A stretch of DNA of 64,000 nt from Blastocystis sp. Blastoise (lineage: Eukaryota > Protista > Bigyra: Opalinata): NCBI GenBank assembly GCA_039096225.1, contig JBBPEB010000007.1, forward strand, positions 372,001 to 436,000, read 5' to 3'. Shown here one piece after another: positions 37,929-55,109 of the stretch; within the stretch, counting starts at the first letter, position 1, and each line of letters begins with the position of its first letter. The position numbers were made by a program, and so were the translations under genes. The notes beneath the pieces are model-generated. The model was not told the origin of the DNA. It saw only the letters and a list, made by a program, of their open reading frames with translations, and made no database searches.

Positions 37929-37971
37929 AAAAAATGTAAAAAAGAAACGCCTGATAGGGGGATCGAACCCC
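37929..37971 (-). repeat. Target-site duplication, 3' copy (tRNA-Lys T-arm/acceptor 3' strand plus T-rich terminator)
   Basis: Minus strand GGGGTTCGATCCCCCTATCAGGCGTTTCTTTTTTACATTTTTT, identical to 55019-55061. Confidence 0.95.
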
Positions 37972-40900
37972 AAGTGTTAGCCAATTAAAGTAACCATTTG
38001 TACCAGAGAGAACGGTACACAAACAGAAAAAGAACATAAAAAAAAATTAAAATAAATTTAAAATATCATTTAATAACATTTGTTCATTTTGTTTTGTTTA
38101 AGTATGTTTTACCGCGGGGATATCACAACACATGTATTTCATATGCACCTTAAAATCACCAATAGGACTCTCTGAATGGGATTTGTGTACTGATACCAGA
38201 TCTAGTAACACAATTTTTACACCTCCCAAGCATTTCTGGGATATAGCTGATGTATAGGTACAATATACCTTTCATATCACGACTATATATATATAATTAA
38301 TATAATTTAATTAATTTAATTAATATAGAAGGTTAATAAGTAATAGAATAATTTTTTAAGTAATATTTTTAAGATAAGAGTTTAATAAACAGTAAGTAAG
38401 AGAAAAAGAGAAAATTCAATCTATAAATATATAGATATTCAAAGAAGAACTGATTATAAATAAAATCAGTATAAATAAGTTTTAATTAAATAAAATTAGA
38501 ATAAGATATAAAGAAAAGATTTCAATAAAAAGATATATATAAAAAGTAGTAAATTATAAAATCAAGTAAAAGTAATATATCCAATATAATATATAGAGGA
38601 TAGGGAGTAGATATGTATAGTAAGTATAATATAAAGTAGAATTATTAATATAATATCCATTGTAATATGTAGAGGATAAGTAGTAGATAAATTTCATCAA
38701 TATAGTATAAGTAGTAGTAGTATATCCAATATAGTATATGGAGGATAAGTAGTAGTTTTATAGAGGATAATTAGTAGTATATATTATTCCATATAGTAAT
38801 ATATATTACTCCATATTTCGTTGAGTTAATTCAATATGAGCAGCAGAAGAATGTAGTCTAGAAATATTTTTTGTAATTAGTCTAGAATCAGAAAGAGATA
38901 GTCTCCAATACTTATAGGCCCATTCTAAGACTATATCATTAATTTTTGATATTAAAAAGTATAAGTATCTTCCTTTGAGTTTTGAGACTTGAGATATATT
39001 ATGAATAGTAGATTCAGGAATTGTCCCAGAGGCACCAATGATAACAGTATAGTAAGAGATTTGTTTATTAGGGAAATCATGTTGTAATTTTTGTATAGCT
39101 TCATCATATGAATGATCTTTAGTATGTTTCATTTCTAAGAGAGTATCACGAGTTCCATCTACCTGTTCATAAGTAACACCAATTTCTACCATTCTTATTT
39201 CTTTCTCACTTGTAATTATAATATCTGGACGGCGATTAGCCCATTCTTCTTTATTCTTACCATCATATAGAATAGTATTCATTGATTTTTCTTGATTGAC
39301 TTTAAAAATAGTATAAGGAAGAGTTTTTGCCAAAGATCTAGTTAAACATTCTCGTATTTCATTATGTCTTTTGCTAATCAGATCGTGTCCATTTTCATTT
39401 CTAGAAATTCTAGCACAAGTAGTCATGATGTGGGTTTGACTATGTATTTTTGATTCATTTTTAGTTTTCAAACAATAAGGACATAAAGCGACAGTATCAT
39501 GTAGAGTAGGTTTTTTTCCTTTTGGATCTTGTCTTCTATAAGCCATTTCACCAGTATATAGGGTTCTCATTCGAAGATTCAATAAGGCACAGTATTTTGA
39601 AGGATTAATATGTTTTGTTTTGTATATCCATTTGTTACACGATATATTATTATTCAAGTATTTAGTATATTGTAAATAGGAGTATTCTTTCAGCATAGAA
39701 GCATGTCTTATTTTCAAAGATTCATTTAATAATTTACACATCTTACGTTTCACATCTTTCGCTTCTATAAATTTCGATATACTATTATCAGTACTTCTTA
39801 TTCTTATTCCAGCTCCATTTTTCGGATTATTTTCATAGTAACATATGTCCATGTTTAATGCAACTATAGCATCAATAGCTTTTCTTATATAAGGGAATGG
39901 ATGGTTCAGTGTAGTAAAGTCTATATCTAGAGGAATAACAGTATTATTTTCTTTCTTTGCTTTTAAGGGTTTGTTAATGTTGTTGATAGATAGATTAAAG
40001 AATACCAAATCTTTCTTTCTAGTTTCAGGGATTTCAGTAGGAATATGGCCTCTCATATAGTTTATTGGATCATTAATCACATATAGAGAATTTTGTAGAG
40101 TAGTATATCTAAGAGCATAATATAAAGTATTTCTAATATTTATATCATTTGAATTAGCTATTCTTACCAGTAGAGAAGCTTTACCAATATAATACCTATC
40201 TAACAACAAAGTAACACCAAGTCCACCATCTCGTATTGAAGTGCTATAAAAGTCTTTAGGCCAGACAGAAGAACATCCATTCCAATTCTTAACATTATTT
40301 CTTATTAGTACATCCAGTTCTTTTATTTTAAGTATATTAGTATCACCATTTCTAGCCAAGAATTCAATACAAGGAATAATATATTGACGAAGAGTTATTA
40401 ATTTTTGATGAGGACTAATAGGAATTGTGTTTAATGAATTTATTTTTTCTTTGATTTCATCTAAGGTATTCACCCAGAATTCTCTTCGTTTAGTAATGGA
40501 TTCACCCATAGGACATCCTAAATATCTTTGGATTTCAGTATCTTTAAGTAGAGTAATCACTTCATTATTATAAGTAGGAGGAGGAGGAGTATAAGTAAGT
40601 TTTCTATTTCCATCATTGGAATATTTCATCGCTAAACACTTACATTTATTAACCGATAGTTTCATATGATATATATTAAGTATTTCTTTTACCTTTCCTA
40701 AAAGAACTTCCGTATCTTCTTTATTGTTAGCTAGCAGGACGATATCATCTGCATAAGCATAAGCATTACTTTCTGATATAACAATAGGATTATTAGGAGT
40801 AGTGTTATCTTTAATATTCATCATCATTGCTTGATTATTGTTCAGGTAATTCAATAAAGGATTAAGTATAATATTGAATAGAAGAGGAGATAGTGGATCA

Positions 40901-43900
40901 CCTTGTCTTATTCCACGCTTTAAGTATATAGGATCTGTATATGAATTTTTGGTTAATCTTATGACAGTATTAGCAGAAGAGTATAAGGATAGAATAATAT
41001 TTCTGAAGTCTATAGGAAAGTTCATATATTGAAGAATTTGATGCATTAATCTTTGAGGTACCGTATCATAGGCCTTCTCCAAGTCAAGGAAAGTAAAATA
41101 GGCAGCAGTTTTAGCTCTTCTAGATAGTTTAAAGTTAGCTATGTAGTTTTGTAGTATGAAATTAAGTTCTTCACAACCAGGTATTCCAGATATAAATCCT
41201 TTTTGATATTTTGACATAAAGTTTTGTTTATTGTTTAGTTCATTCATGTAAGTAACCATTATAGAAGAAAGTATTTTTGATTCAGTATTTTGTAAAGCCA
41301 AAGGTCTCCAGTTTCCTAAGCTACTAGGATCCGATTTATTTTTGTCTAGTAGGCAAGTGATAGAGGAACTCCAAGATTTTAGAGTAATACCATTCGAACG
41401 ACATATTTCTAATATATAAGCCAATAGAGAACAAGCAGAAGAGGAGTATTTGTATACTTCATAAGGGAGACCATTAGGACCAGGAGTACTGTTATTTGGT
41501 AAAAATTTTAATGCATGTTTAATTCTTTCATAGGTTATCTTATTAAGGGCAGGAGGATTTAGTAATTGTTTAGTATTTGATTTTATAATATCTGGAAGTA
41601 ATATATTATCTGAAGTTTCTTGTGAGTCATATAGTTTCGTAAATTGTTCTTGTAAATCCTTAGAAGGTATTTCACAATATCTAGGAGTAGTTTTAGAGAA
41701 TACTTTACTTCTTAAGAAAGCTTTAGTATTCTTATCAAATTCAGATTGTATTTTCTTAGCATCATTAATAGAAGTAATTCTTATTTTAGCTTCTTTGAGT
41801 TGGTTAATATTCCATAAGCATGATTCTATCTCATTCATTATAAGATTTAATATCTCTTTCCATTGTTCTAGAGTAAGTAGAGGAGTATTATTATTTTCAT
41901 TATCTTTCTGTAAGATATTTAATATATTTATTTTTAATTCTTCATCTTCATCAAAGAGTGTAATAGATTGTAGTTTATTTTTCCAATTAAGGATAGACTC
42001 TGAAAGAGTAGAAGAGATAGTATAGGATTCAGTTTCAGGAATATTAGGTAATATAGTATGATTCAAATCGTATTTTAGAGTATCTAGATTACTTTTTAGA
42101 TTATTATAGTATTTCTTTAAAGCTTCAATTTCATTATCCGTAGATTTTCTGAAAGGATTATTATCAAAGAAATCATCATTCGTTTGTTTGAATTTATTAT
42201 TCATATGTATAGTGTTCGTATTATTAGAAGGAGTAGTAGTAGTAGGAGGAGGGGAAGTAGTAGAAGGAGTAGTAGTAGAAGTAGAGGGAGTAGTACTATT
42301 TATAGTAGTAGATCGATTAGTAGTAGTAGTATTATTAGTAGTAGTAGAAGGACTTAAATCCATATAGTTCTTATATTTATTATTCTTTTTATATTTATTT
42401 TTATTACTATAATTGTTTATAGGATGATTATAATTATTCTTTCTTCTATTATATCTATGTTGATTATAATCATGATTATTTCCAGGAATATTTTGAGTAT
42501 CATATCGATTTTGAGTATTCCCGTGATTATTTTGAGAAATATCATGCGTATCCATATCATCCATATTATTAGTAGTATTCTGAAGATTATTAGGAGTAGA
42601 ATCAATATGACTTCGATTTTGACCATAACCGCGATTATTTTGAGAAATATCATGAGTATTCATATACTTTTTTCTATATTGATTATTCTTTCTAGCATAT
42701 ATTTTCTTTGAGTTTCTATATTGGTTATTTGATCTATATGAATTGCCATTTCTATTCTTAATATTCTTTCCAGCATAAAAGTATTTATTTGAAGAATTCT
42801 TATCATTATAACTATTCTTTTGAGAAGGAGAATAACTATTATTCTTTCTGTATATAGTGTTGTATTTCTTAGTAGAACTATTGTTATTGAGATTATTATT
42901 ATGCCAAGATCTGTAAGTAGGAATAGAGTTATTATATATCCAGTTATAAAGTTCATTTTGAATATAATCACATATATTATTGAAGGAATTAATCATTTCG
43001 TTATTCATCTGTATAGTATTCGATTCATCAGAGGAGATAGGGAAAGGAGTAACAAGAGGTATGAGTTTATCTTCTATAAATTTGTTAAATCTAATGAAAC
43101 TTTTCCAATTTCCTAATTTATGTATAGCCATAGAAGAAAGTCGTCTTTTAGGAGTATTATCTACTTTGATAGTTTTTGAGAATTGTATAGTTTTCTGAAT
43201 ATTAATAGGAGAGTAAGTAGAAAGGAGATCTTCAGTATTAGGAATTCGAGGAGCCTTTATATAATCATCATATTTTGATTTATTCTTAGTATTCTTATTT
43301 TTATTTCCTTTTTGTGTAGAATTCTTTTTATTCTTTTGAGTTGAATTATTTGTAGAAGTATTTTCTTGAGTATTAGAAGATTCAATATCCATCATAGTAT
43401 CATTATTAGTATTCATAGTAGTAGAAGCTATTTCTTCTTGTATTTCCATAGTATTCATAGGAGTATTTGTTTCAGAATTACTCATGTTTTGATCTATATC
43501 TATATCAATATCTATAGTATTATTATTGTTTAAAATTTCATTCGTATTGATAGGAAAAGGAGTAGTAGTAGTTTCTATAGTAGTAGTAGTTTCTGTAGTA
43601 GTTTTCTTAGATTCATTTGTATCTTTATGAGTAGAAATAATAGGAGTAAAATTAAAATCTATATTAGAGAGACTTATATGATTTTCAAGAGGAATAGGAG
43701 AATCCATAGGAGAGGTAGCAGTTGAAGTGGATGTAGAAGAGATATTAATTATCGATTCATCAGAAGATATATCATAATATTCATTTTGATTCTGTATTGT
43801 AGTTGTATTATTCATTTGAGTATTAGTTTCATCAAGATTAATAGGATTTCTCTTATTTTGTATATTTTCTTCTTCATTAGCTATAGATGTAGTAATATCA

Positions 43901-46428
43901 TTGTTTGTAGTAATATTCATAGTATTATTTACTAAATCCTTATGAATAGATTCCTTTTGCTGATTAATATTATTTGTATTAGAATCAATAGTATTCAAAG
44001 TAGAAGGAATACTATTAATATCTATATCTAATTCCATATCTATATTTTCCATAGAACTATTAGGAGACAATTGAGTATTATTTATAGAAGGAGAAGATAT
44101 AATAGTATTGTTTATTATATTGGTATTTATTTGCTCTATATTCATAGAAGAAGATAAGTTTGTTGAATCTATATTAGAAGGAGATTCTATAGATATAGGA
44201 GATTCTATAGTAGAAGAAAGATTGACTGTAATAGGAGATTCTATAGATATAGGAGATTCTATAATAGTATGATCATCTGGATTTATAGTAGTATTCATGA
44301 TAATAGGAGTATCTATATTATTTGTAGTATTTGTAGAAGAAGAAGAAGTATGTATAGGAATAGAATTAGAATTAATTATAGAATTTGAGATAGAAGGAAT
44401 AGTAGGCTCAATAGTAGTTATAGAATCAGAAGGAACAGGAGATAAAAAGGTACCCATATTAGTATGTGTATTATCCTCAATTTCATTTTGTATATAGTTA
44501 TTTATTGTATCACTTGGAGTTATTCTTTCTTGTATAGGGATTTCATTTTGTTTCGCTACTTCATTTATTGGAGCACTAGAATTTCTATGTTTATTTGAAT
44601 AAATATTTCTGAGAGTTCGTAGTAAGTAGAACAGTGTATTCACACTTGACTGAGGGAATAACATGGAGAATGATTTTTGGCGTGTAATTCTTTTTTGAAT
44701 TCTAGGCCTATTTTTTCTTTTCTCGTAGATAAACATTAAAGTGAAGTGATTTATAAATTCCTTTAAGGATTCTATATTATTCCATTTCTTTCCATTTTTA
44801 TGTTTTTTTATTGTGTTATAACCAATTAGAAATTCAGGTTTTGCCGGGAAAAGCCAATTAAATTTAGTAGGAAAATCTTTAGGAGGAGAAGTAATAGTAT
44901 ATATATTAGTAGGTAATAGAATATTAAAATTATTTCCATGAGTAGTTTCAAGTATATTATCAATAGTAGGAATTTCATATTCACCAAGTATTTCATTAGG
45001 AGTATAGGTATGTACATCATCTAAAGTATCATAAGAGGATTCATGTTCTTCATCACTTAAGTTCATTGTAATTAATTCATCTTCGGAAGATATAGAAGAA
45101 TTATGTTGTATAACGTTTGATTGATTATTAGTAGTTAAAAAAGTATTATTATTAGTATTTATAGACGTATTTATTGAAGTGTTTGTAGATGATGGAGAAG
45201 ATAATTCCAATGTAGATATATTATTATTTTGAGCCCAAGAAGGAGGATTTGTATCATTTGGGAATATTCTTTGATGTAATAATTGACTAAGTGTAGGAGT
45301 AGGAGGAGAATTAGAAGATATAGGAAAATCTGAGGATTCACTAGGAGTATTTTCATTCATAGAGTTATCAATATTGTTTTCATTCAATTCCATATTTATA
45401 TTACTTTTTTGTATCTCAGCATCCATTTTATCATTCTCATCAACTACTGTTGTATCAATATTGATTACATTGCTTTCTTCAGTATTCATCGAAACATCTT
45501 TCATTTCATTTTCATTTCGTATTTCTTTACTTTGAGAGGAATTAGGAATAATTTCTTGTAGATTCTGAGTCGTTTCATTCATAGAGGGATTCATAGTAGT
45601 TTCATTCATAGTATTAGATTCATCTAAGGGTATTGTAGTAGTTTCATCATTCGTAGTACCAAAGTTCGTAGAGAATGTAGAAGTAGGTTTCATAGTATTT
45701 CGAGGATCATCATAATCAATCCAAATATTGATATCAGTAGACCAAGAGCTTTGCACAGAGTAGTTCGAGGACCATGAAGTTTTAGTAGAGGAGAAATTCC
45801 AATCATTCTTTTTCGTAGTATCATCATTTTTCGTAGATAGAGAGTTTACAGCATCCTTTGTAGACATAGTAGGTTCAACAAGTTCATCACCATCTTTCTT
45901 CTTTCTTAAACTCATAAAATCAGTACATACAGGAGACATCTTTCTCTTTTTCGCAAGTGTAGAAGTTTCAATGTAGAAGACTTCAGTTTCTAGAGGTATA
46001 GGACTGTTCTGGTTGTGTAGAGGTAATGTAGTTGTAGAGATAGATGTAGAAGAAGAAATATCCTTTTCAGGATTATTTTTGGGTTGTAAATAACCGTTAT
46101 TATTTGGTGGATCTTTCAAAGTAATAGAAGAACCACGGGAGGCTTCGGAATTTCCTGGGATTTCACATCCGGAGAAATTCTCTTTTTCCTGAATTGGAAG
46201 ACCATTCTGAGCATATTTTATTTGTTTTTGATTTTTTGAAGCCCCAAGGAATTCTTGAGTATTTCCACCATCACTAATCATCTTATCATCTTCTCTAGCA
46301 CACACAGAAGAAGAAACGGAAGAATTCTGACCTTTATAAACTGATTGTAAAAGATCATGTTGGAGTTTTGACTCCGGAACAGAAGCATTGTTACTTATTT
46401 GGATTGCTGATTGCATGAGGATAAAAAT
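37972..46428 (-). mobile_element. Non-LTR retrotransposon copy A (RLE-type, R2-supergroup), full length ~8.46 kb
   Basis: Bounded by tRNA-derived duplications. Single ORF, ~830-nt 3' UTR ending ...GGCTAACACTT with no poly(A). Near-identical to copy B over its 3' ~6.9 kb. Confidence 0.95.
38806..46416 (-). CDS. Retrotransposon polyprotein A, 2536 aa (RT + CCHC + restriction-like endonuclease)
   Basis: Likely start MQSAI at 46416, conserved in both copies. RT motifs PGPNG, NWRPLAL, YQKGF, FLDLEKAYDTV, GIRQGDPLSPLLFN, AYADD, RYLG, GGLG. CPYC-x13-H-x4-C knuckle. RLE motifs KRHN, RPDII, MVEIGV, K..K..Y. Confidence 0.95.
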   Translation of the reverse strand: MQSAIQISNNASVPESKLQHDLLQSVYKGQNSSVSSSVCAREDDKMISDGGNTQEFLGASKNQKQIKYAQNGLPIQEKENFSGCEIPGNSEASRGSSITLKDPPNNNGYLQPKNNPEKDISSSTSISTTTLPLHNQNSPIPLETEVFYIETSTLAKKRKMSPVCTDFMSLRKKKDGDELVEPTMSTKDAVNSLSTKNDDTTKKNDWNFSSTKTSWSSNYSVQSSWSTDINIWIDYDDPRNTMKPTSTFSTNFGTTNDETTTIPLDESNTMNETTMNPSMNETTQNLQEIIPNSSQSKEIRNENEMKDVSMNTEESNVINIDTTVVDENDKMDAEIQKSNINMELNENNIDNSMNENTPSESSDFPISSNSPPTPTLSQLLHQRIFPNDTNPPSWAQNNNISTLELSSPSSTNTSINTSINTNNNTFLTTNNQSNVIQHNSSISSEDELITMNLSDEEHESSYDTLDDVHTYTPNEILGEYEIPTIDNILETTHGNNFNILLPTNIYTITSPPKDFPTKFNWLFPAKPEFLIGYNTIKKHKNGKKWNNIESLKEFINHFTLMFIYEKRKNRPRIQKRITRQKSFSMLFPQSSVNTLFYLLRTLRNIYSNKHRNSSAPINEVAKQNEIPIQERITPSDTINNYIQNEIEDNTHTNMGTFLSPVPSDSITTIEPTIPSISNSIINSNSIPIHTSSSSTNTTNNIDTPIIMNTTINPDDHTIIESPISIESPITVNLSSTIESPISIESPSNIDSTNLSSSMNIEQINTNIINNTIISSPSINNTQLSPNSSMENIDMELDIDINSIPSTLNTIDSNTNNINQQKESIHKDLVNNTMNITTNNDITTSIANEEENIQNKRNPINLDETNTQMNNTTTIQNQNEYYDISSDESIINISSTSTSTATSPMDSPIPLENHISLSNIDFNFTPIISTHKDTNESKKTTTETTTTIETTTTPFPINTNEILNNNNTIDIDIDIDQNMSNSETNTPMNTMEIQEEIASTTMNTNNDTMMDIESSNTQENTSTNNSTQKNKKNSTQKGNKNKNTKNKSKYDDYIKAPRIPNTEDLLSTYSPINIQKTIQFSKTIKVDNTPKRRLSSMAIHKLGNWKSFIRFNKFIEDKLIPLVTPFPISSDESNTIQMNNEMINSFNNICDYIQNELYNWIYNNSIPTYRSWHNNNLNNNSSTKKYNTIYRKNNSYSPSQKNSYNDKNSSNKYFYAGKNIKNRNGNSYRSNNQYRNSKKIYARKNNQYRKKYMNTHDISQNNRGYGQNRSHIDSTPNNLQNTTNNMDDMDTHDISQNNHGNTQNRYDTQNIPGNNHDYNQHRYNRRKNNYNHPINNYSNKNKYKKNNKYKNYMDLSPSTTTNNTTTTNRSTTINSTTPSTSTTTPSTTSPPPTTTTPSNNTNTIHMNNKFKQTNDDFFDNNPFRKSTDNEIEALKKYYNNLKSNLDTLKYDLNHTILPNIPETESYTISSTLSESILNWKNKLQSITLFDEDEELKINILNILQKDNENNNTPLLTLEQWKEILNLIMNEIESCLWNINQLKEAKIRITSINDAKKIQSEFDKNTKAFLRSKVFSKTTPRYCEIPSKDLQEQFTKLYDSQETSDNILLPDIIKSNTKQLLNPPALNKITYERIKHALKFLPNNSTPGPNGLPYEVYKYSSSACSLLAYILEICRSNGITLKSWSSSITCLLDKNKSDPSSLGNWRPLALQNTESKILSSIMVTYMNELNNKQNFMSKYQKGFISGIPGCEELNFILQNYIANFKLSRRAKTAAYFTFLDLEKAYDTVPQRLMHQILQYMNFPIDFRNIILSLYSSANTVIRLTKNSYTDPIYLKRGIRQGDPLSPLLFNIILNPLLNYLNNNQAMMMNIKDNTTPNNPIVISESNAYAYADDIVLLANNKEDTEVLLGKVKEILNIYHMKLSVNKCKCLAMKYSNDGNRKLTYTPPPPTYNNEVITLLKDTEIQRYLGCPMGESITKRREFWVNTLDEIKEKINSLNTIPISPHQKLITLRQYIIPCIEFLARNGDTNILKIKELDVLIRNNVKNWNGCSSVWPKDFYSTSIRDGGLGVTLLLDRYYIGKASLLVRIANSNDINIRNTLYYALRYTTLQNSLYVINDPINYMRGHIPTEIPETRKKDLVFFNLSINNINKPLKAKKENNTVIPLDIDFTTLNHPFPYIRKAIDAIVALNMDICYYENNPKNGAGIRIRSTDNSISKFIEAKDVKRKMCKLLNESLKIRHASMLKEYSYLQYTKYLNNNISCNKWIYKTKHINPSKYCALLNLRMRTLYTGEMAYRRQDPKGKKPTLHDTVALCPYCLKTKNESKIHSQTHIMTTCARISRNENGHDLISKRHNEIRECLTRSLAKTLPYTIFKVNQEKSMNTILYDGKNKEEWANRRPDIIITSEKEIRMVEIGVTYEQVDGTRDTLLEMKHTKDHSYDEAIQKLQHDFPNKQISYYTVIIGASGTIPESTIHNISQVSKLKGRYLYFLISKINDIVLEWAYKYWRLSLSDSRLITKNISRLHSSAAHIELTQRNME

Positions 46429-46470: not shown

Positions 46471-49400
46471 AAGTGTTAGCCAATTAAAGTAACCATTTGT
46501 ACCAGAGAGAACGGTACACAAACAGAAAAAGAACATAAAAAAATTAAAATAAATTTAAAATATCATTTAATAACTTTTGTTCATTTTGTTTTGTTTAAGT
46601 ATGTTTTACCACGGGGATATCACAACACATGTATTTCATATGCACCTTAAAATAACCAATAGGACTCTCTGAATGGGATTTGTGTACTGATACCAGATCT
46701 AGTAACACAATTTTAACACCTCCCAAGCATTTCTGGGATATAGCTGATGTATAGGTACAATATACCTTTCATATCACGACTATATATATGTAATTAATAT
46801 AATTTAATTGATTTAATTAATATTAAAGGTTAATAAGTAGTAGAATAATTTTTTAAGTAATATTTTTAAGATAAGAGTTTAATAAATAGTAAGTAAGAGA
46901 AAAAGAGAAAATTCAATCTATAAATATATAGATATTCAATCAGAGCTGATTATAAATTCAATCAGTATAAATAAGTTTTCATTAAATAGAATTAGAATAA
47001 GATATAAAGAAAAGATTTCAATAAAAAGATATATATAAAAAGTAGTAAATTATAAAATCAAGTAAAAGTAATATATCCAATATAATATATAGAGGATAGG
47101 GAGTAGATATATATAGTAAGTATAATATAAAGTAGAATTATTAATATAATATCCATTGTAATATGTAGAGGATAAGTAGTAGATAAATTTCATCAATATA
47201 GTATAAGTAGAAGTAGTATATTCAATATAGTATATGGAGGATGAATAGAAGTATTATAGAGGATAATTAGTAGTATATATTATTCCATATAGTAATATAT
47301 ATTATTCAATATTTCGTTGAGTTAGTTCAATATGAGCAGCAGAAGAATGTAGTCTAGAAATATTTTTTGTAATTAGTCTAGAATCAGAAAGAGATAGTCT
47401 CCAATACTTATAGGCCCATTCTAAGACTATATCATTAATTTTTGATATTAAAAAGTATAAGTATCTTCCTTTGAGTTTTGAGACTTGAGATATATTATGA
47501 ATAGTAGATTCAGGAATTGTCCCAGAGGCACCAAGTATAACAGTATAGTAGGAGATTTGTTTATTAGGGAAATCATGTTGTAATTTTTGTATAGCTTCAT
47601 CATATGAATGATCTTTAGTATGTTTCATTTCTAAGATAGTATCACGAGTTCCATCTACTTGTTCATAAGTAACACCAATTTCTACCATTCTTATTTCTTT
47701 CTCACTTGTAATTATAATATCTGGACGACGATTAGCCCATTCCTCTTTATTCTTACCATCATATAGAATAGTATTCATTGATTTTTCTTGATTGACTTTA
47801 TAAATAGTATAAGGAAGAGCTTTTGCCAAAGATCTAGTTAAACATTCTCGTATTTCATTATGTCTTTTGCTAATCAGATCGTGTCCATTTTCATTTCTAG
47901 AGATTCTAGCACAAGTAGTCATGATGTGTGTTTGACTATGTATTCTTGATTCATTTTTAGTTTTCAAACAATAAGGACATAAAGCGACAGTATCATGTAG
48001 AGTAGGTTTCTTTCCTTTCGGATCTTGTCTTCTATAAGCCATCTCACCAGTATATAGGGTTCTCATTCGAAGATTCAATAAGGCACAGTATTTTGAAGGA
48101 TTAATATGTTTTGTTTTGTATATCCATTTGTTACACGATATATTATTATTCAAATATTTAGTATATTGCAAATAGGAGTATTCTTTCAGCATAGAAGCAT
48201 GTCTTATTTTCAAAGATTCATTTAATAATTTACACATCTTACGTTTCACATCTTTCGCTTCTATAAATTTCGATATACTATTATCAGTACTTCTTATTCT
48301 TATTCCAGCTCCATTTTTCGGATTATTTTCATAGTAACATATGTCCATGTTTAAAGCAACTATAGCATCAATTGCTTTTCTTATATAAGGGAAGGGATGG
48401 TTCAGTGTAGTAAAGTCTATATCTAGAGGAATAATAGTATTATTTTCTTTCTTTGCTTTTAAGGGTTTGTTAATATTGTTGATAGATAGATTAAAGAATA
48501 CCAAATCTTTCTTTCTAGTTTCAGGGATTTCAGTAGGAATATGGCCTCTCATATAGTTTATTGGATCATTAATCACATATAGAGAATTTTGTAGAGTAGT
48601 ATATCTAAGAGCATAATATAAAGTATTTCTAATATTTATATCATTTGAATTAGCCATTCTTACCAGTAGAGAAGCTTTACCAATATAGTACCTATCTAAC
48701 AACGAAGTAACACCAAGTCCACCATCTCGTATTGAAGTGCTATAAAAGTCTTTAGGCCAGACAGAAGAACATCCATTCCAATTCTTAACATTATTTCTTA
48801 TTAGTACATCCAGTTCTTTTATTTTAAGTATATTAGTATCACCATTTCTAGCCAAGAATTCAATACAAGGAATAATATATTGACGAAGAGTTATTAATTT
48901 TTGATGAGGACTAATAGGAATAGTATTTAAAGAATTTATTTTTTCTTTGATTTCATCTAACGTATTCACCCAGAATTCTCTTCGTTTAGTAATGGATTCA
49001 CCCATAGGACATCCTAAATATCTTTGGATTTCAGTATCTTTAAGTAGAGTAATCACTTCATTATTATAAGTAGGAGGAGGAGGAGTATACGTAAGTTTTC
49101 TATTTCCATCATTGGAATATTTCATCGCTAAACACTTACATTTATTAACCGATAGTTTCATATGATATATATTAAGTATTTCTTTTACCTTTCCTAAAAG
49201 AACTTCCGTATCTTCTTTATTGTTAGCTAGCAGGACGATATCATCTGCATAAGCATAAGCATTACTTTCTGATATAACAATAGGATTATTAGGAGTAGTG
49301 TTATCTTTAATATTCATCATCATGGCTTGATTATTGTTCAGGTAATTCAATAAAGGATTAAGTATAATATTGAATAGAAGAGGAGATAGGGGATCACCTT

Positions 49401-52400
49401 GTCTTATTCCACGCTTTAAGTATATAGGATCTGTATATGAATTTTTGGTTAATCTTATAACAGTATTAGCAGAAGAGTATAAGGATAGAATAATATTTCT
49501 GAAGTCTATAGGGAAGTTCATATATTGAAGAATTTGATGCATTAATCTTTGAGGTACCGTATCATAGGCCTTCTCCAAGTCGAGGAAAGTAAAATAGGCA
49601 GCAGTTTTAGCTCTTCTAGATAGTTTAAAGTTAGCTATGTAGTTTTGTAGTATGAAATTAAGTTCTTCACAACCAGGTATTCCAGATATAAATCCTTTTT
49701 GATATTTTGACATAAAGTTTTGTTTATTGTTTAGTTCATTCATGTAGGTAACCATTATAGAAGAAAGTATTTTTGATTCAGTATTTTGTAAAGCCAAAGG
49801 TCTCCAGTTTCCTAAGCTACTAGGATCCGATTTATTTTTGTCTAGTAGGCAAGTGATAGAGGAACTCCAAGATTTTAGAGTAATACCATTCGAACGACAT
49901 ATTTCTAATATATAAGCCAATAGAGAACAAGCAGAAGAGGAGTATTTGTAAACTTCATAAGGGAGACCATTAGGACCAGGAGTACTGTTATTTGGTAAAA
50001 ATTTTAATGCATGTCTAATTCTTTCATAGGTTATCTTATTAAGGGCAGGAGGATTTAGTAATTGTTTAGTATTTGATTTTATAATATCTGGAAGTAATAT
50101 ATTATCTGAAGTTTCTTGTGAATCATATAGTTTCGTAAATTGTTCTTGTAAATCCTTAGAAGGTATTTCACAATATCTAGGAGTAGTTTTAGAGAATACT
50201 TTACTTCTTAAGAAAGCTTTAGTATTCTTATCAAATTCGGATTGTATTTTCTTAGCATCATTAATAGAAGTAATTCTTATTTTAGCTTCTTTAAGTTGGT
50301 TAATATTCCATAAGCATGATTCTATCTCATTCATTATAAGATTTAATATCTCTTTCCATTGTTCTAGAGTAAGTAGAGGAGTATTATTATTTTCATTATC
50401 TTTCTGTAAGATATTTAATATATTTATTTTTAATTCTTCATCTTCATCAAAGAGTGTAATAGATTGTAGTTTATTTTTCCAATTAAGGATAGACTCAGAA
50501 AGAGTAGAAGAGATAGTATAGGATTCAGTTTCAGGAATATTAGGTAATATAGTATGATTCAAATCGTATTTTAGAGTATCTAGATTACTTTTTAGATTAT
50601 TATAGTATTTCTTTAAAGCTTCAATTTCATTATCCGTAGATTTTCTGAAAGGATTATTATCAAAGAAATCATCATTCGTTTGTTTGAAATTATTATTCAT
50701 ATGTATAGTGTTAGTATTATTAGTAGGAGTAGTAGTAGTAGGAGGAGGGGAAGTAGTAGGAGGAGAAGCAGTAGAAGGAGAAGTAGTATCAGTAGAGGGA
50801 GTAGTACCATTTATAGTAGTAGATCGATTAGTAGTAGTAGTAGTAGAAGGACTTAAATCCATATAGTTCTTATATTTTTTATTCTTTTTATATTTGTTTT
50901 TATTACTATAATTGTTTATAGGATGATTATAATTATTCTTTCTTCTATTATATCTATGTTGATTATAATCATGATTATTTCCAGGAATATTTTGAGTATC
51001 ATATCGATTTTGAGTATTCCCATGATTATTCTGAGAAATATCATGAGTATTCATAGCATCCGTATTATTAGTAGTATTCTGAAGATTATTAGGAGAAGAA
51101 CCAGTATAGTTTTGATTTTGACCATAACCGCGATTATTTTGAGAAATATCATGCATATCCATATACTTCTTTCTATATTGATTATTCTTTCTAGTATATG
51201 TTTTCTTTAAGTTTCTATATTGGTTATTTGATCTATATGAATTGCTATTTCTATTTTTTCCAGCATAAGAATATTTATTTGAAGAATTCTTATCATTATA
51301 GTTATTCCTTTGAGAAGGAGAATAACTATTATTCTTTCTGTATATAGTATTATATTTCTTAATAGAACTGTTGTTATTGAGATTATTATCATGCCAAGAT
51401 CTATAAGTAGGAATAGAATTATTATATATCCAGTTATAAAGTTCATTTTGAATATAATCACATATATTATTGAAGGAATTAATCATTTCGTTATTCATCT
51501 GTATAGTATTCGATTCATCAGAGGAGTTAGGGAAAGGAGTAACAAGAGGTATGAGTTTATCTTCTATAAATTTGTTAAATCTAATGAAACTTTTCCAATT
51601 TCCTAATTTATGTATAGCCATGGAAGAAAGTCGTCTTTTAGGAGTATTATCTACTTTGATAGTTTTTGAGAATTGTATAGTTTTCTGAATATTAATAGGA
51701 GAGTAAGTAGAAAGGAGATCTTCAGTATTAGGAATTCGAGGAGCCTTTATATAATCATCATATTTTGATTTATTCTTAGTATTCTTATTTCTATTTCCTT
51801 TTTGTGTAGAATTCTTTTTATTCTTTTGAGTTGAATTATTTGTAGAAGTATTTTCTTGAGTATTAGAAGATTCAATATCCATCATAGTATCATTATTAGT
51901 ATTCATAGTAGTAGAAGCTATTTCTTCTTGTATTTCCATAGTATTCATAGGAGTATTTGTTTCAGAATTACTCATGTTTTGATCTATATCTATATCAATA
52001 TCTATAGTATTATTATTGTTTAAAATTTCATTCGTATTGATAGGAAGAGGAGTAGTAGTAGTTTCTATAGTAGTAGTAGTTTCTGTAGTAGTCTTCTTAG
52101 ATCCATTTATGTCTTTTTGAGTAGAATTAAGTGGAGTAAAATTAAAATCTATATTCGAGAGACTTATATGATTTTCAAGAGGAATAGGAGAATTCATAGG
52201 AGAGGTAGTAGTTGAAGTGGATGTAGAAGAAATATTAATTATCGATTCATCAGAAGATACATCATAGTATTCATTTCGATTCTGTATTGTAGTTGTATTA
52301 TTCATTTGAGTATTAGTTTCATCAAGATTAATAGTATTTCTCTTATTTTGTGTATTTTCTTCTTCATTAGTTATAGATGTAGTAATCTCCTTGTTTGTAG

Positions 52401-55018
52401 TAATATTCATAGTATTATTTACTAAATCCTTATGGATAGATTCCTTTTGCTGATTAATATTATTTGTATTAGAATCGATAGTATTCAAAGTAGAAGGAAT
52501 ACTATTAATATCTATATCTAATTCCATATCTATATTTTCTATAGAACTATTAGGAGACAATTGAGTATTATTTATAGAAGGAGAAGATATAATAGTATTG
52601 TTTATTATATTGGTATTTATTTGATCTATATTCATAGAAGAAGATAAGTTTGTTGAATCTATATTAGAAGGAGATTCTATAGATATAGGAGATTCTATAG
52701 TAGAAGAAATATTGACTGTAATAGGAGATTCTATAGATATAGAAGATTCTATTATAGTATGATCATCTGGATTTATAGTAGTATTCATGATAATAGGAGT
52801 ATCAATATTATTTGTAGTATTTGTAGAAGAAGAAGAAATATGTATAGGAATAGAATTAGAATTAATTATAGAATTTGAGATAGAAGGAATAGTAGGTTCA
52901 ATAGTAGTTATAGAATCAGAAGGAACAGGAGATAAAAAGGTACCCATATTAGTATGTGTATTATCCTCAATTTCATTTTGTATATAGTTATTTGTTGTAT
53001 CACTTGGAGTTATTCTTTCTTGTATAGGGATTTCATTTTGTTTCGCTACTTCATTTATTGGAGCACTAGAATTTCTATGTTTATTTGAATAAATATTTCT
53101 GAGAGTTCGTAGTAAGTAGAACAGTGTATTCACACTTGACTGAGGGAATAACATGGAGAATGCTTTTTGGCGGGTAATTCTTTTTTGAATTCTAGGCCTA
53201 TTTTTTCTTTTCTCGTAGATAAACATTAAAGTGAAGTGATTTATAAATTCCTTTAAGGATTCTATATTATTCCATTTCTTTCCATTTTTATGTTTTTTTA
53301 TTGTGTTATAACCAATTAGAAATTCAGGTTTTGCCGGGAAAAGCCAATTAAATTTAGTAGGAAAATCTTTAGGAGGAGAAGTAATAGTATATATATTAGT
53401 AGGAAAAGAAAGAATAAATTCATTATTTTCAATAGTATTTAGTATAGTTTCATTTGTAGGAATCTCATTTTCATCTATTATATCATTAGGAGTAAGTATA
53501 GGTATTTCTATATTAGAATCAGAATTCGTATATATATCTTGATCCTCTTGTTCGGTATTATTTAAATTGATAGAAATAGGTTCATCTTCAGAGGATAAAA
53601 GGGAGGTAGTTTGTATAGAAGGATGAATAATTTCATTTCCAATAGGAGTATTATTTGTAATTGTAGCAGTATCTATTATAGTAGTATTTGAAGATGTAGA
53701 TAAAGAAGGAGATAGTTCTAGTGTAGGATTTCTTGCCCAAGAAGGAGGATTCGTATCATTTGGGAATATTCTATTGTGTAGTAATTGACTAAGTGTAGGA
53801 GTAGGAGGAGAATCAGAAGATTCAGGAGAATTTATAGCATCAGGAGAGTTTATAGAATCAGAAGAATCCATAGAAAAAGAAGAATCCATAGGAGCAGAAG
53901 AATCAAGAGCATTAGAAGAAACCATAGAAGCAGAAGAATAAATAGAATTAGTAGAATCAACAAAAGCAGAAGAATCAATAGCATTAGAAGAATTCATTAA
54001 ATTAGTAGATTCAGAAGTATTTAAAACAGTAGAATTAGATTGTGTAATGTTAACAGTAGGAATATTTTCATGAGTAGAAATAATAGATAAATTAGTAGAT
54101 TCGTTAGTAGAATTGTTCAACAGGGATTCTTTTGTAGAGGACACATTTTCAGGAGTAGATAACGCATTAGAAGAAATAATAGTAGTAGAATTTTCATTAA
54201 GAGTGTTTGTAGCCACCGAAATAACCATAGGTACATCATTTTGTTGATTTAGAGTCGTATTTTGTGTAGGAAGTCCAAGATTGGTAGTAGATTTTTGAGT
54301 AGATTTCACGTTTTGTTTAGGATCATCATAATCAATCCAAATGTTTACATTAGTAGACCAAGACTTAGCAAAGGCATCAGAAGACCAACCAGTAGAAGAC
54401 CAAGATTCATCTTTCTTTTCAGAAGTATTTTCAGTAGAAGGTTTCAAAGGTTCAGAATTCACTTGTAGAGAAGAGTCAAGAGGAGGGTTCAAAGGAGTAT
54501 CCACTCTTTTTCGAATAGACTTGTATTGTGTAGATATCGGAGACATAATTCGTTTCTTAGCCGAGGAAGTAGTATCTACGTAGAGGGTATCACTTTCAGA
54601 AAGTACCCAGTTAGAAGAATTGTTTGTAGTTGTAGTAGTTGAACCAGTAAGAGATAAGTCTATTAATTCTTTAGTATTTAAAGAATAATCTTGTTTATTT
54701 TGAGGATCTATTTTAGTAGTAGTAGAATCACGGGAGAACTCGGAGTTTTGTGGGATTTCAAATCCGGAAAAAACCAATTTTGATCTTGGATCACCATTTT
54801 CATCATAATTTTTTTGTTTTTCGTTTTTCTCATCTTCCACAGATTTAATTCGTTTCTCGTTTATCTGTAAACTGTTCTCATCGCTAGGGCTAGGAGCAGA
54901 AGAAGACGCCAGGTTCGTAGACCCAGATTTATCTCTGATCTTCAGATCAACTTGGAGTTTTGACTCCGGAACTTCACCGTTGTTACTAAAATGGATTGCT
55001 GATTGCATGAGGATATAA
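46471..55018 (-). mobile_element. Non-LTR retrotransposon copy B (same family), full length ~8.55 kb
   Basis: Same 3' terminus (...CTAACACTT joined to GGGGTTCG), same 3' UTR, single intact ORF. Starts directly downstream of the intact tRNA-Lys. Confidence 0.95.
47302..55008 (-). CDS. Retrotransposon polyprotein B, 2568 aa (RT + CCHC + restriction-like endonuclease)
   Basis: Likely start MQSAI at 55008. Same RT, CCHC and RLE motifs as copy A, with only about a dozen mostly conservative substitutions across RT-EN. Confidence 0.95.
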   Translation of the reverse strand: MQSAIHFSNNGEVPESKLQVDLKIRDKSGSTNLASSSAPSPSDENSLQINEKRIKSVEDEKNEKQKNYDENGDPRSKLVFSGFEIPQNSEFSRDSTTTKIDPQNKQDYSLNTKELIDLSLTGSTTTTTNNSSNWVLSESDTLYVDTTSSAKKRIMSPISTQYKSIRKRVDTPLNPPLDSSLQVNSEPLKPSTENTSEKKDESWSSTGWSSDAFAKSWSTNVNIWIDYDDPKQNVKSTQKSTTNLGLPTQNTTLNQQNDVPMVISVATNTLNENSTTIISSNALSTPENVSSTKESLLNNSTNESTNLSIISTHENIPTVNITQSNSTVLNTSESTNLMNSSNAIDSSAFVDSTNSIYSSASMVSSNALDSSAPMDSSFSMDSSDSINSPDAINSPESSDSPPTPTLSQLLHNRIFPNDTNPPSWARNPTLELSPSLSTSSNTTIIDTATITNNTPIGNEIIHPSIQTTSLLSSEDEPISINLNNTEQEDQDIYTNSDSNIEIPILTPNDIIDENEIPTNETILNTIENNEFILSFPTNIYTITSPPKDFPTKFNWLFPAKPEFLIGYNTIKKHKNGKKWNNIESLKEFINHFTLMFIYEKRKNRPRIQKRITRQKAFSMLFPQSSVNTLFYLLRTLRNIYSNKHRNSSAPINEVAKQNEIPIQERITPSDTTNNYIQNEIEDNTHTNMGTFLSPVPSDSITTIEPTIPSISNSIINSNSIPIHISSSSTNTTNNIDTPIIMNTTINPDDHTIIESSISIESPITVNISSTIESPISIESPSNIDSTNLSSSMNIDQINTNIINNTIISSPSINNTQLSPNSSIENIDMELDIDINSIPSTLNTIDSNTNNINQQKESIHKDLVNNTMNITTNKEITTSITNEEENTQNKRNTINLDETNTQMNNTTTIQNRNEYYDVSSDESIINISSTSTSTTTSPMNSPIPLENHISLSNIDFNFTPLNSTQKDINGSKKTTTETTTTIETTTTPLPINTNEILNNNNTIDIDIDIDQNMSNSETNTPMNTMEIQEEIASTTMNTNNDTMMDIESSNTQENTSTNNSTQKNKKNSTQKGNRNKNTKNKSKYDDYIKAPRIPNTEDLLSTYSPINIQKTIQFSKTIKVDNTPKRRLSSMAIHKLGNWKSFIRFNKFIEDKLIPLVTPFPNSSDESNTIQMNNEMINSFNNICDYIQNELYNWIYNNSIPTYRSWHDNNLNNNSSIKKYNTIYRKNNSYSPSQRNNYNDKNSSNKYSYAGKNRNSNSYRSNNQYRNLKKTYTRKNNQYRKKYMDMHDISQNNRGYGQNQNYTGSSPNNLQNTTNNTDAMNTHDISQNNHGNTQNRYDTQNIPGNNHDYNQHRYNRRKNNYNHPINNYSNKNKYKKNKKYKNYMDLSPSTTTTTNRSTTINGTTPSTDTTSPSTASPPTTSPPPTTTTPTNNTNTIHMNNNFKQTNDDFFDNNPFRKSTDNEIEALKKYYNNLKSNLDTLKYDLNHTILPNIPETESYTISSTLSESILNWKNKLQSITLFDEDEELKINILNILQKDNENNNTPLLTLEQWKEILNLIMNEIESCLWNINQLKEAKIRITSINDAKKIQSEFDKNTKAFLRSKVFSKTTPRYCEIPSKDLQEQFTKLYDSQETSDNILLPDIIKSNTKQLLNPPALNKITYERIRHALKFLPNNSTPGPNGLPYEVYKYSSSACSLLAYILEICRSNGITLKSWSSSITCLLDKNKSDPSSLGNWRPLALQNTESKILSSIMVTYMNELNNKQNFMSKYQKGFISGIPGCEELNFILQNYIANFKLSRRAKTAAYFTFLDLEKAYDTVPQRLMHQILQYMNFPIDFRNIILSLYSSANTVIRLTKNSYTDPIYLKRGIRQGDPLSPLLFNIILNPLLNYLNNNQAMMMNIKDNTTPNNPIVISESNAYAYADDIVLLANNKEDTEVLLGKVKEILNIYHMKLSVNKCKCLAMKYSNDGNRKLTYTPPPPTYNNEVITLLKDTEIQRYLGCPMGESITKRREFWVNTLDEIKEKINSLNTIPISPHQKLITLRQYIIPCIEFLARNGDTNILKIKELDVLIRNNVKNWNGCSSVWPKDFYSTSIRDGGLGVTSLLDRYYIGKASLLVRMANSNDINIRNTLYYALRYTTLQNSLYVINDPINYMRGHIPTEIPETRKKDLVFFNLSINNINKPLKAKKENNTIIPLDIDFTTLNHPFPYIRKAIDAIVALNMDICYYENNPKNGAGIRIRSTDNSISKFIEAKDVKRKMCKLLNESLKIRHASMLKEYSYLQYTKYLNNNISCNKWIYKTKHINPSKYCALLNLRMRTLYTGEMAYRRQDPKGKKPTLHDTVALCPYCLKTKNESRIHSQTHIMTTCARISRNENGHDLISKRHNEIRECLTRSLAKALPYTIYKVNQEKSMNTILYDGKNKEEWANRRPDIIITSEKEIRMVEIGVTYEQVDGTRDTILEMKHTKDHSYDEAIQKLQHDFPNKQISYYTVILGASGTIPESTIHNISQVSKLKGRYLYFLISKINDIVLEWAYKYWRLSLSDSRLITKNISRLHSSAAHIELTQRNIE

Positions 55019-55037
55019 AAAAAATGTAAAAAAGAAA
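55019..55037 (-). terminator. Pol III T-rich terminator of tRNA-Lys
   Basis: TTTCTTTTTTACATTTTTT immediately after the discriminator base. Confidence 0.7.
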
Positions 55038-55109
55038 CGCCTGATAGGGGGATCGAACCCCTGACCACTGGATTAAAAGTCAAGCGCTCTACCGCTGAGC
55101 TAACCAGGC
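55038..55109 (-). tRNA. tRNA-Lys(UUU), intronless, 72 nt
   Basis: GCCTGGT TA GCTC AGCGGTA GAGC G CTTGA CT TTT AA TCCAG TGGTC AGGGG TTCGATC CCCCT ATCAGGC G forms a full cloverleaf with A and B boxes. Anticodon TTT at 55075-55077. Confidence 0.95.

What the first reader, a model, noticed from the sequence alone, without database searches (positions are those of the whole stretch)
37929..55109. Site-specific RLE non-LTR retrotransposon family inserting inside the T-arm of tRNA-Lys(UUU)
Seen: two full-length elements whose 3' ends (...CTAACACTT) are both joined to the same tRNA nucleotide (between A49 and G50, TGGTCA^GGGGTTCGATC), just before the B box. Both encode RT + CCHC + PD-(D/E)xK endonuclease. 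Known: RLE-encoding clades (R2, R4, NeSL/Utopia, CRE/SLACS) target multicopy RNA genes such as rDNA, SL RNA and U2, and tRNA targets are rare. Inference: a sequence-specific, probably active family with a tRNA-Lys target that I do not recognise as described. It is also a candidate for R2-like targeted gene insertion tools.
Basis: partly seen in the sequence, partly recalled or inferred. Interest (0 to 1): 0.92.

Follow-up and report, generated by a model that had tools for sequence, protein, structure and literature searches.

The report
tRNA-Lys-specific retrotransposon that rebuilds its target
Two 8.5-kb jumping genes of a tortoise-gut Blastocystis sit head to tail behind a lysine tRNA gene; every copy in the genome enters the tRNA gene at the same base, yet a complete tRNA gene is always left in front, so the target survives and can be hit again.

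Summary
On the minus strand the window holds a full tRNA-Lys(UUU) gene, element A (8,567 bp), a 24-nt tRNA fragment (nt 50-73), element B (8,475 bp), and the same fragment again. All 11 element 3' ends in the 33-Mb genome join G50 of this tRNA. Five of the six tRNA-Lys(UUU) genes carry stacks, and each stack keeps an intact tRNA in front.

Each element has one 2,536-2,568-aa ORF with an R2-like reverse transcriptase, a CCHC knuckle and a PD-(D/E)xK endonuclease. The first 1,560 residues hold no zinc finger. Eight A copies are at least 99.92% identical and seven have intact ORFs. A versus B gives dN/dS of about 0.06-0.1 in the catalytic parts, so the family is recently active.

The host is Blastocystis sp. 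'Blastoise'. The family is not described in the papers I could search. However, tRNA-specific RLE elements are already known (NeSL-1_TV, LIN15_SM, LIN25_SM; PMC4640811), so this is a new variant of a known kind.

New here:
- Only 24 bp of the apparent 43-bp duplication is independent of the locus.
- At least three distant relatives from metagenomes show the same layout of a tRNA 3' part on both sides.

No RNA evidence could be obtained. The scan had already found and followed up this family on other contigs of the same genome.

The parts
55038..55109 (-). Complete tRNA-Lys(UUU) gene, the regenerated target in front of the stack
   Evidence: ARAGORN; Rfam tRNA 64 bits; one of six identical genes in the genome
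46471..55037 (-). Element A, the younger copy (8,567 bp), 100% identical to the first copy on contig C13
55009..55037 (-). 29-nt leader of A. Its first 10 nt (TTTCTTTTTT) form a T-run that would act as Pol III terminator for the tRNA in front. The leader is the same at every locus whatever the native trailer.
   Evidence: the same leader at C33, C10, C13, C14 and C29; the terminator role is inferred
47302..55008 (-). ORF of A, 2,568 aa; identical to NCBI KAK8810187.1 'hypothetical protein', Blastocystis sp. Blastoise
49012..49830 (-). Reverse transcriptase domain of A
   Evidence: Pfam RVT_1 E 3e-32; R2 structures E 3e-41
47911..47979 (-). CCHC zinc knuckle of A (aa 2344-2366)
47512..47868 (-). 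PD-(D/E)xK restriction-like endonuclease of A (RHN, RRPD, VEIGV, K, GASG motifs)
   Evidence: alignment with RLE relatives; weak alignment to the R2 endonuclease
51364..51771 (-). Ordered island aa 1080-1215 in the otherwise low-complexity, cysteine-free N-terminal 1,560 aa. It is under purifying selection and is a candidate nucleic-acid-binding module.
   Evidence: dN/dS 0.12; no Pfam or phmmer hit; weak atlas lead; AF2 pLDDT 44
46471..47301 (-). 3' UTR of A (831 nt), no poly(A), ends ...GGCTAACACTT; contains 76-nt degenerate repeats
46447..46470 (-). 24-nt tRNA fragment (nt 50-73) between A and B
37972..46446 (-). Element B, the older subfamily (8,475 bp). It is 95.8% identical to A over the 3' 7.4 kb; the first 1.1 kb is strongly diverged; it begins with one extra A after the tRNA fragment.
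38806..46416 (-). ORF of B, 2,536 aa, intact (RT 40516-41334; CCHC 39415-39483; RLE 39016-39372)
37948..37971 (-). 24-nt tRNA fragment (nt 50-73) behind B: the original 3' part of the first target
37929..37947 (-). Trailer behind the stack; shares its first 19 nt with the element leader. It may be native trailer or the remnant of an older element.

Best explanation
This is a sequence-specific non-LTR retrotransposon of the restriction-like-endonuclease (R2/NeSL) type, and its only target is the tRNA-Lys(UUU) gene of Blastocystis sp. 'Blastoise'.

Inferred mechanism. The encoded protein nicks the antisense strand between tRNA positions 49 and 50 and uses that 3' end to reverse-transcribe the element RNA from its fixed 3' end (target-primed reverse transcription). 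The sense strand is joined 24 bp further downstream, at the last nucleotide of the tRNA. Positions 50-73 therefore end up on both sides of the insert.

Shown result. A complete tRNA gene, with A and B boxes, stands in front of the element. The element's first ten bases form a T-run that can serve as the tRNA's terminator. A dead 24-nt fragment stands behind the element.

Because the intact site is rebuilt, later insertions land in front of earlier ones. This makes head-to-tail stacks ordered by age. In this window the young copy A lies next to the tRNA and the older copy B lies behind it.
For: - Site: 11 of 11 3' ends join G50. The intact 24-nt site occurs exactly six times in the genome, always in a full tRNA-Lys gene. 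Five of these have stacks and one (C1) is empty.
- Protein: RVT_1. Solved R2 proteins are the best PDB hits, with the endonuclease also aligned. CCHC, RHN, PD, E, K and GxSG motifs are conserved with RLE-type relatives. There is no APE domain and no LTR.
- The leader belongs to the element. The same 29-nt leader follows the tRNA at C33 and C10, whose native trailers differ from position +1 and +12. Only 24 bp is therefore duplicated in a locus-independent way.
- The 5' junction varies by one A exactly at the tRNA end / leader boundary in two of three B copies, as is usual for non-LTR 5' joints.
- Repeated insertion rather than duplication: in all five stacks the near-identical A copies lie next to the tRNA and B or older remnants lie distal. 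A SNP at element position 8324 sorts A copies by their place in the stack in most cases.
- Activity: eight A copies are at least 99.92% identical and seven ORFs are intact. dN/dS is 0.06 for RT and 0.10 for CCHC+RLE.
- The layout recurs. Metagenome relatives L055, L058 and L056/57 are preceded by a tRNA 3' part plus T-run, and L055 and L056/57 are also followed by the same tRNA part.
- Precedent: 20-bp TSDs in reptile Utopia, intact U2 genes in front of oomycete Utopia, and a long tRNA duplication in LIN15_SM (PMC4640811).
Against:
- No biochemical evidence exists for either cleavage site.
- The sequence cannot tell a 24-bp target duplication from an element that carries tRNA nt 50-73 itself, because all six tRNA genes are identical.
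- No N-terminal zinc finger or Myb domain was found, so how the target is read is unknown.
- The truncated C23 copy has no tRNA in front.
- C1 and C10 share a flank but not the upstream DNA. Some array history therefore involves recombination or misassembly.
Confidence: 0.87

Rival explanations
1. Same element and same nick, but no target duplication. The element RNA itself begins with tRNA nt 50-73 plus an old captured trailer, because it is transcribed together with or from within the tRNA in front. The sense strand is cut next to the first nick, and copying the cDNA end rebuilds the tRNA.
For: The leader looks like a tRNA-Lys trailer: its first 11 nt are identical to the native C1/C10 trailer. 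The ATG lies only 29 nt behind the tRNA, which leaves little room for a promoter of its own. In relatives the 3' junction lies at different depths of the tRNA (at least 28 and at least 30 nt of tRNA are kept), while the family-specific sequence always starts within 0-2 nt of the tRNA end. R2 RNAs that carry upstream 28S sequence are a known parallel (my own knowledge, not checked here).
Against: A one-base difference (an extra A) sits exactly at the tRNA end / leader boundary, which is where a joint is expected. Long duplications are documented for related families (PMC4640811). There are no transcript data.
Confidence: 0.3
2. The stacks arose mainly by unequal crossing-over, gene conversion or segmental duplication of one old insertion, not by repeated retrotransposition into a rebuilt target.
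For: Three loci show the same A-A pair with 8,591-bp spacing. C1 and C10 share a 100% identical flank but different upstream DNA, with the break at the tRNA. Many genes occur twice in this assembly.
Against: Different subfamilies lie in one stack in age order at all five loci. The loci have unrelated upstream and downstream DNA. The two members of a pair differ by SNPs that are shared across loci by position in the stack. dN/dS well below 1 shows descent through functional copies.
Confidence: 0.08
3. The target is not read directly by the protein. It is found through the Pol III machinery (TFIIIC on the B box), as for Ty3 or Dictyostelium TRE elements, and the endonuclease only fixes the exact base.
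For: No zinc finger or Myb domain occurs in 1,560 N-terminal residues. The nick lies directly 5' of the B box.
Against: Only one tRNA species is used, although T-arms and B boxes are shared by all tRNAs; a 46%-identical sister family sits elsewhere. Junctions are exact to the nucleotide. A conserved island under purifying selection could be an unrecognised DNA-binding domain.
Confidence: 0.1

Closest known systems
Utopia (NeSL clade), U2 snRNA-gene-specific RLE retrotransposons, especially those of oomycetes (Kojima & Jurka 2015, PMC4640811)
   Same: Single ORF with RT, CCHC and RLE. Precise 3' junction inside a small multicopy RNA gene. Low-copy target (about 10 genes). Arrays with several families. 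Intact target genes are found in front of the elements in Phytophthora, which is also a stramenopile. 20-bp TSDs occur in reptile families. The closest sequence relative found here (P0001, 27% identity) lies next to U2 genes.
   Different: The target is a tRNA, not U2. Utopia has 1-3 N-terminal zinc fingers, and this element has none. The ORF here is about twice as long. The RT tree leaves the relation unresolved.
tRNA-gene-specific NeSL-related families: NeSL-1_TV (tRNA-Pro, Trichomonas), LIN15_SM (tRNA-Arg) and LIN25_SM (tRNA-Glu) of planarians (PMC4640811, S6 Fig)
   Same: RLE-type elements with fixed insertion sites inside tRNA genes. In LIN15_SM the 5' flank runs well past the 3' junction, so a long stretch of the tRNA is duplicated.
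   Different: The tRNA species and the site differ: LIN15_SM enters near the anticodon stem, and this element enters the T stem. In the one LIN15_SM 5' junction shown, the copy in front stops inside the T arm, so it is not a full tRNA. Here the duplication ends exactly at the last tRNA base. Sequence relatedness could not be tested because Repbase was not available.
R2 (28S rDNA-specific RLE retrotransposon; solved structures 8gh6, 9dou, 9nl2)
   Same: RT with the R2-type N-terminal extension and thumb, CCHC and RLE at the C-terminus; no poly(A); exact 3' junction. R2 proteins are the best solved-structure matches (E 3e-41).
   Different: The target is not rDNA. There is no N-terminal ZF/Myb. 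As far as I know, R2 disrupts its target unit, whereas this element leaves a whole gene. The RT falls outside the presumed R2-like group in the tree.
tRNA-associated retrotransposons that spare the gene: Dictyostelium TRE5/TRE3, yeast Ty1/Ty3 (my own knowledge)
   Same: They use tRNA genes as safe landing places in compact genomes and leave the tRNA functional.
   Different: Those elements insert outside the gene at a distance set by Pol III factors, use APE or integrase, and accept any tRNA gene. This element cuts inside one tRNA species and rebuilds it.

Membership tests
RLE-encoding (early-branching) non-LTR retrotransposons | Non-LTR-type reverse transcriptase in a single long ORF | tested here: met
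   RVT_1 E 3e-32; R2 and LINE-1 proteins are the PDB hits
RLE-encoding (early-branching) non-LTR retrotransposons | C-terminal CCHC motif followed by a PD-(D/E)xK endonuclease; no APE domain | tested here: met
   CCHC at aa 2344-2366; RHN, RRPD, E, K and GxSG motifs align with RLE relatives; no Exo_endo_phos hit
RLE-encoding (early-branching) non-LTR retrotransposons | No long terminal repeats; fixed 3' end; variable or imprecise 5' joint | tested here: met
   The only flanking repeat is the 24-27-nt tRNA fragment. 11 identical 3' ends. A 0/1 extra A at the 5' joint.
RLE-encoding (early-branching) non-LTR retrotransposons | Insertion by target-primed reverse transcription | not testable with these tools
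   Needs a nicking/TPRT assay
R2 clade in the strict sense | Insertion in the conserved 28S rDNA site | tested here: not met
   All copies are in tRNA-Lys
R2 clade in the strict sense | N-terminal zinc finger(s) and Myb DNA-binding motif | tested here: not met
   One cysteine in aa 1-1560 of copy A; no Pfam ZF or Myb hit
NeSL clade including Utopia | RT groups with NeSL/Utopia in a phylogeny | tested here: inconclusive
   The element lies in a 95%-supported group with a U2-flanked relative and an Ulp1-bearing relative, but as a polytomy; no named reference sequences were available
NeSL clade including Utopia | One to three N-terminal C2H2 zinc fingers (Ulp1 protease in some) | tested here: not met
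   None found in A or B; both are present in relative P0002
NeSL clade including Utopia | Specific site in a multicopy small RNA gene | tested here: met
   tRNA-Lys(UUU), between nt 49 and 50
Described tRNA-specific families (NeSL-1_TV, LIN15_SM, LIN25_SM) | Sequence relatedness to, or the same tRNA and site as, those families | tested here: not met
   Different tRNA species and a different site. Sequence relatedness was not tested because Repbase was not available.

The most novel reading that the evidence does not exclude
This element may be one member of an unrecognised, widespread lineage of giant-ORF, zinc-finger-less RLE retrotransposons in AT-rich gut protists. Members would all live directly behind tRNA genes, rebuild the tRNA and its terminator at each insertion, and have switched tRNA species several times: Lys here, a 46%-identical sister family elsewhere in this genome, and at least two other tRNAs in metagenome relatives. 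The element-specific sequence always starts within 0-2 nt of the tRNA's last base, while the 3' junction depth varies. This would then reflect use of the tRNA itself, through co-transcription and tRNA 3'-end processing (RNase Z) or homology-guided joining, to define the element RNA and its 5' joint.
Probability: 0.3. Interest if true: 0.8.

Novelty: new variant of a known kind. Interest (0 to 1): 0.62.

Why it matters
- Site-specific RLE retrotransposons normally inactivate the gene copy they enter, and they persist only because the target family is large. Here the target family has six genes and five are occupied, yet none is lost, because each insertion rebuilds the gene and its terminator. 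This gives a parasite a self-renewing safe harbour, and it explains the age-ordered stacks.
- The family, its sister family and the metagenome relatives offer a natural series of TPRT enzymes with different tRNA specificities and no recognisable zinc-finger reader. That is of interest for how R2-like proteins read DNA.
- More remotely, it bears on R2-based insertion tools that would not damage the landing gene.
- It is also the first specific retrotransposon biology described for Blastocystis. The genome paper reports only bulk repeat percentages (PMC12129017).

Tried and rejected
The whole 3' UTR gives z = -0.87. Rfam gives no tRNA hit there even at E 10. Not supported.
- N-terminal domains: no Pfam hit. 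phmmer of three islands against all collected relatives found nothing. The protein atlas gave nothing for island 1 and only weak NDC10_II / integrase-like leads for island 2. Single-sequence AlphaFold models had pLDDT of 44-47, so no fold search was run.
Its tRNA-Phe target, reported in earlier notes, is untested by me. The genome-wide tRNA listing was too partial to help.
- Clade naming: no Repbase or Dfam references were available, and the trees leave a polytomy.
- Other relatives: L054 (P0359, Myb+ZF+RT) and L060 (P0360, a large eukaryote chromosome) gave no clear target. P0365 had no DNA.
- A bacterial-style integrase island at a tRNA 3' end was considered and rejected: there is no recombinase, and RT plus RLE are present.
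- The sigma-70 promoter scan is irrelevant for a eukaryote.


Full report
ANATOMY. The window is contig C29:372001-436000 of a 33.3-Mb, 34-contig, roughly 18% G+C genome. ARAGORN and Rfam find a single tRNA, tRNA-Lys(UUU), at 55109..55038 on the minus strand. Reading the minus strand gives, in order:
- the full tRNA;
- element A, 55037..46471 (8,567 bp);
- a 24-nt copy of tRNA positions 50-73, 46470..46447;
- element B, 46446..37972 (8,475 bp);
- the same 24 nt, 37971..37948;
- the flank.

Both elements end in ...GGCTAACACTT, with no poly(A), directly before G50. This is one base pair into the T stem and just 5' of the B box. The only direct repeat that flanks copy A is the tRNA fragment, so there are no LTRs.

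CODING CAPACITY. Each element has one ORF that starts 29 nt behind the tRNA sequence: A has 2,568 aa and B has 2,536 aa.
- Pfam sees only RVT_1 (E 3e-32).
- Solved R2 proteins are the best PDB matches (E 3e-41 to 1e-27), ahead of LINE-1 ORF2p, and the C-terminal endonuclease aligns weakly as well.
- An alignment with RLE-type relatives shows the CCHC knuckle (aa 2344-2366 in A), the RHN motif, and the catalytic PD, E and K positions followed by GxSG.
- The first 1,560 residues of A contain a single cysteine and no Pfam zinc finger or Myb domain. They are mostly N/S/T-rich low complexity with two ordered islands (aa ~530-660 and ~1080-1215).

I could not assign a fold to the islands. There was no phmmer similarity to any collected relative, only weak language-model leads, and low-confidence AlphaFold models.

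GENOME-WIDE TEST OF SITE SPECIFICITY. The 3' UTR occurs 11 times, and all 11 copies are joined to G50 of the same tRNA fragment. A protein search finds the same 11 copies and no others above 50% identity. The tRNA gene occurs six times, all identical. The 24-nt sequence spanning the nick occurs exactly six times even with three mismatches allowed.

Five genes carry stacks:
- C33: one A copy.
- C10: A-A.
- C13: A-A plus an old remnant.
- C14: A-A-B plus a remnant.
- C29 (this window): A-B.

C1 is empty. A degraded array on C23, near a contig end, lacks the tRNA.

HOW MUCH IS DUPLICATED. In this window the tRNA fragment plus 19 nt of trailer look duplicated (43 bp). Across loci, the 29-nt leader that follows the full tRNA is the same whatever lies behind the stack.
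- At C33 the native trailer differs from the first base.
- At C10, whose native trailer is confirmed by the empty C1 locus (100% identical flank), it differs from base 12.
- The tails behind the C13 and C14 stacks are about 90-nt remnants of older element 5' ends, not native DNA.

The leader therefore travels with the element, and only the 24 tRNA nucleotides are duplicated independently of the locus. Two of the three B copies have one extra A exactly between the tRNA end and the leader, which is where a 5' joint would lie.

The leader starts with TTTCTTTTTT. Its role as Pol III terminator for the rebuilt tRNA is an inference. The sequence alone cannot separate two models, because all six tRNA genes are identical:
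- a 24-nt staggered second-strand cut;
- an element RNA that itself begins with nt 50-73.

ACTIVITY AND HISTORY. The eight A copies differ at nine positions in 8.6 kb. Seven have intact ORFs, and C14_1 has a one-base insertion. A variant at position 8324 separates tRNA-proximal copies (T) from most distal copies (A). This fits successive waves of insertion in front of earlier ones.

B is 95.8% identical to A over the 3' 7.4 kb. The first 400 codons, however, are only 34% identical with dS of 0.86, so the 5' module is mosaic.

Between A and B, dN/dS is:
- 0.06 in the RT;
- 0.10 in CCHC+RLE;
- 0 in the pre-RT region;
- 0.12 in island 2;
- 0.5-0.7 in the low-complexity parts.

The lineages therefore diverged while the protein was needed. 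In every stack the youngest copies lie next to the tRNA. Unequal crossing-over does not predict this order.

HOST. An intronless HSP70 of this genome is 100% identical to KAK8807319.1 of 'Blastocystis sp. Blastoise'. Protein A is deposited as the hypothetical protein KAK8810187.1 of the same organism. The genome paper (PMC12129017) reports only total repeat content and does not mention retrotransposons or tRNAs.

RELATIVES. Outside this genome the nearest proteins are only 25-30% identical.
- The best hit, P0001, lies beside U2 snRNA genes and so is Utopia-like.
- P0002 has C2H2 + Ulp1 protease + RT, the NeSL architecture.

In FastTree and IQ-TREE analyses of the RT, A and B form a long branch inside a 95%-supported group. 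That group also holds the U2/Ulp1 relatives, a clade of giant-ORF elements, and a clade containing P0290, P0362, P0388 and P0372. The order among these four is unresolved. A group with R2-like CCHC spacing lies outside.

The contigs of P0290/P0356 (L055), P0388 (L058) and P0372 (L056/57) come from 24-26% G+C metagenome organisms. Each begins with a tRNA T-arm plus acceptor 3' strand plus T-run, followed within about 80-250 nt by the ATG. L055 and L056/57 also end with the same tRNA part. Two giant-ORF relatives (L061, L062) are tandem units separated by a 15-20-nt segment plus T-run that looks like a tRNA 3' end, but this is not proven.

The layout 'tRNA 3' part on both sides, terminator, short leader, ORF' is thus not peculiar to this genome. 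Whether it has one origin is open.

KNOWN BIOLOGY. Kojima & Jurka 2015 (PMC4640811) already list tRNA-specific RLE families: NeSL-1_TV (tRNA-Pro), LIN15_SM (tRNA-Arg) and LIN25_SM (tRNA-Glu). They also report 20-bp duplications for reptile Utopia and intact U2 genes in front of Utopia in Phytophthora. Their S6 figure shows LIN15_SM entering near the anticodon stem, with a 5' flank that reaches into the T arm.

A tRNA target and a long duplication are therefore precedented. What I did not find described is:
- a tRNA-Lys-specific family;
- a T-stem site;
- a duplication that ends exactly at the tRNA's last base so that gene and terminator are rebuilt;
- such an element in Blastocystis;
- an RLE element of this size without N-terminal zinc fingers.

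Repbase and Dfam could not be consulted.

LIMITS.
- No expression or read evidence. I worked beside those places and sent none of their letters to any search tool afterwards.
- The sister family with 46% identity could not be fetched. Its reported tRNA-Phe target comes from earlier notes of this scan and is untested here.
- The same family had already been followed up by this scan on other contigs. My results agree with those notes. They add the cross-locus limit of 24 bp, the selection analysis and the metagenome relatives. They do not support the pseudo-cloverleaf idea.

VERDICT. This is a real, recently active, strictly site-specific RLE retrotransposon family that rebuilds its tRNA-Lys target. 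It is a new variant of a known kind and of solid interest to transposon biologists.

Noticed in passing
window 44913-46416 versus 53500-55008 (first ~400 codons of B and A): The two copies are 94-99% identical at the protein level from codon ~400 on, but only 34% identical before it (dS 0.86 against about 0.05). The 45 nt around the leader and ATG are conserved again. This looks like exchange of a 5' module between lineages.
   Followed up: partly
L035:5026-9702 (contig C13) and contig C14 at about 683,900-696,200; also next to the truncated C23 copy: A ~12-kb Helitron (1,559-aa ORF with Helitron_like_N + PIF1 helicase) is inserted just after the stop codon of B copy C14_3. It also lies behind the C13 stack and beside the C23 copy. 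That makes three associations with these arrays.
   Followed up: partly
contigs C1:374804-379386 and C10:48000-52481: The empty tRNA-Lys locus on C1 and the occupied one on C10 share 4.5 kb of downstream flank at ~100% identity, but the DNA upstream is unrelated, and the break lies exactly at the tRNA. This is either ectopic exchange between tRNA/element arrays or a misjoin of the assembly at the repeat.
   Followed up: partly
contigs C13 (behind 636242) and C14 (behind 696876): Behind the last tRNA fragment of these stacks lie about 90-nt remnants of an older, divergent element 5' end (leader plus about 20 codons), followed by unrelated DNA. Old stack members seem to be lost by deletion.
   Followed up: partly
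genome G000: C23:75195-78086, C23:269546-272434, C15:488102-490987, C15:724039-747701, C4:1520457-1584167, C4:2408859-2422170: A sister family with 44-52% protein identity over RT-RLE and ORFs up to 2,787 aa has at least 10 copies or fragments. Earlier notes of the scan say it targets tRNA-Phe. I could not fetch it.
   Followed up: no
L061:150-220 and L062:7700-7775 (metagenome contigs): Giant-ORF relatives (2,529-2,661 aa) occur as tandem units. The element 3' end (AATAAAC motif) is followed by about 15-20 nt of the form AGTCCCG + 7 nt + C, then a T-run, and the next ATG follows within 10 nt. These may be tRNA 3' ends.
   Followed up: partly
L049:3703-3884 and 5329-5473 (metagenome contig, 1.16 Mb): The closest outside relative (P0001) lies in a cluster of RT genes interleaved with one complete and one partial U2 snRNA gene. 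This is a Utopia-like array.
   Followed up: partly
window 38577-38816 and 47027-47312: The start of each 3' UTR holds about two copies of a degenerate 76-nt repeat and 22-nt repeats. Their function is unknown.
   Followed up: no
window 18525-21509 (-) and 26696-32104 (+): Two long ORFs (994 and 1,802 aa) outside the elements have no Pfam match.
   Followed up: no
genome G000, e.g. HSP70 loci C25/C16, C4/C8, C33 (twice), C1/C21: Many HSP70-family loci occur as identical pairs on different contigs. This suggests large duplicated blocks or uncollapsed haplotypes, which matters when counting 'independent' loci.
   Followed up: no
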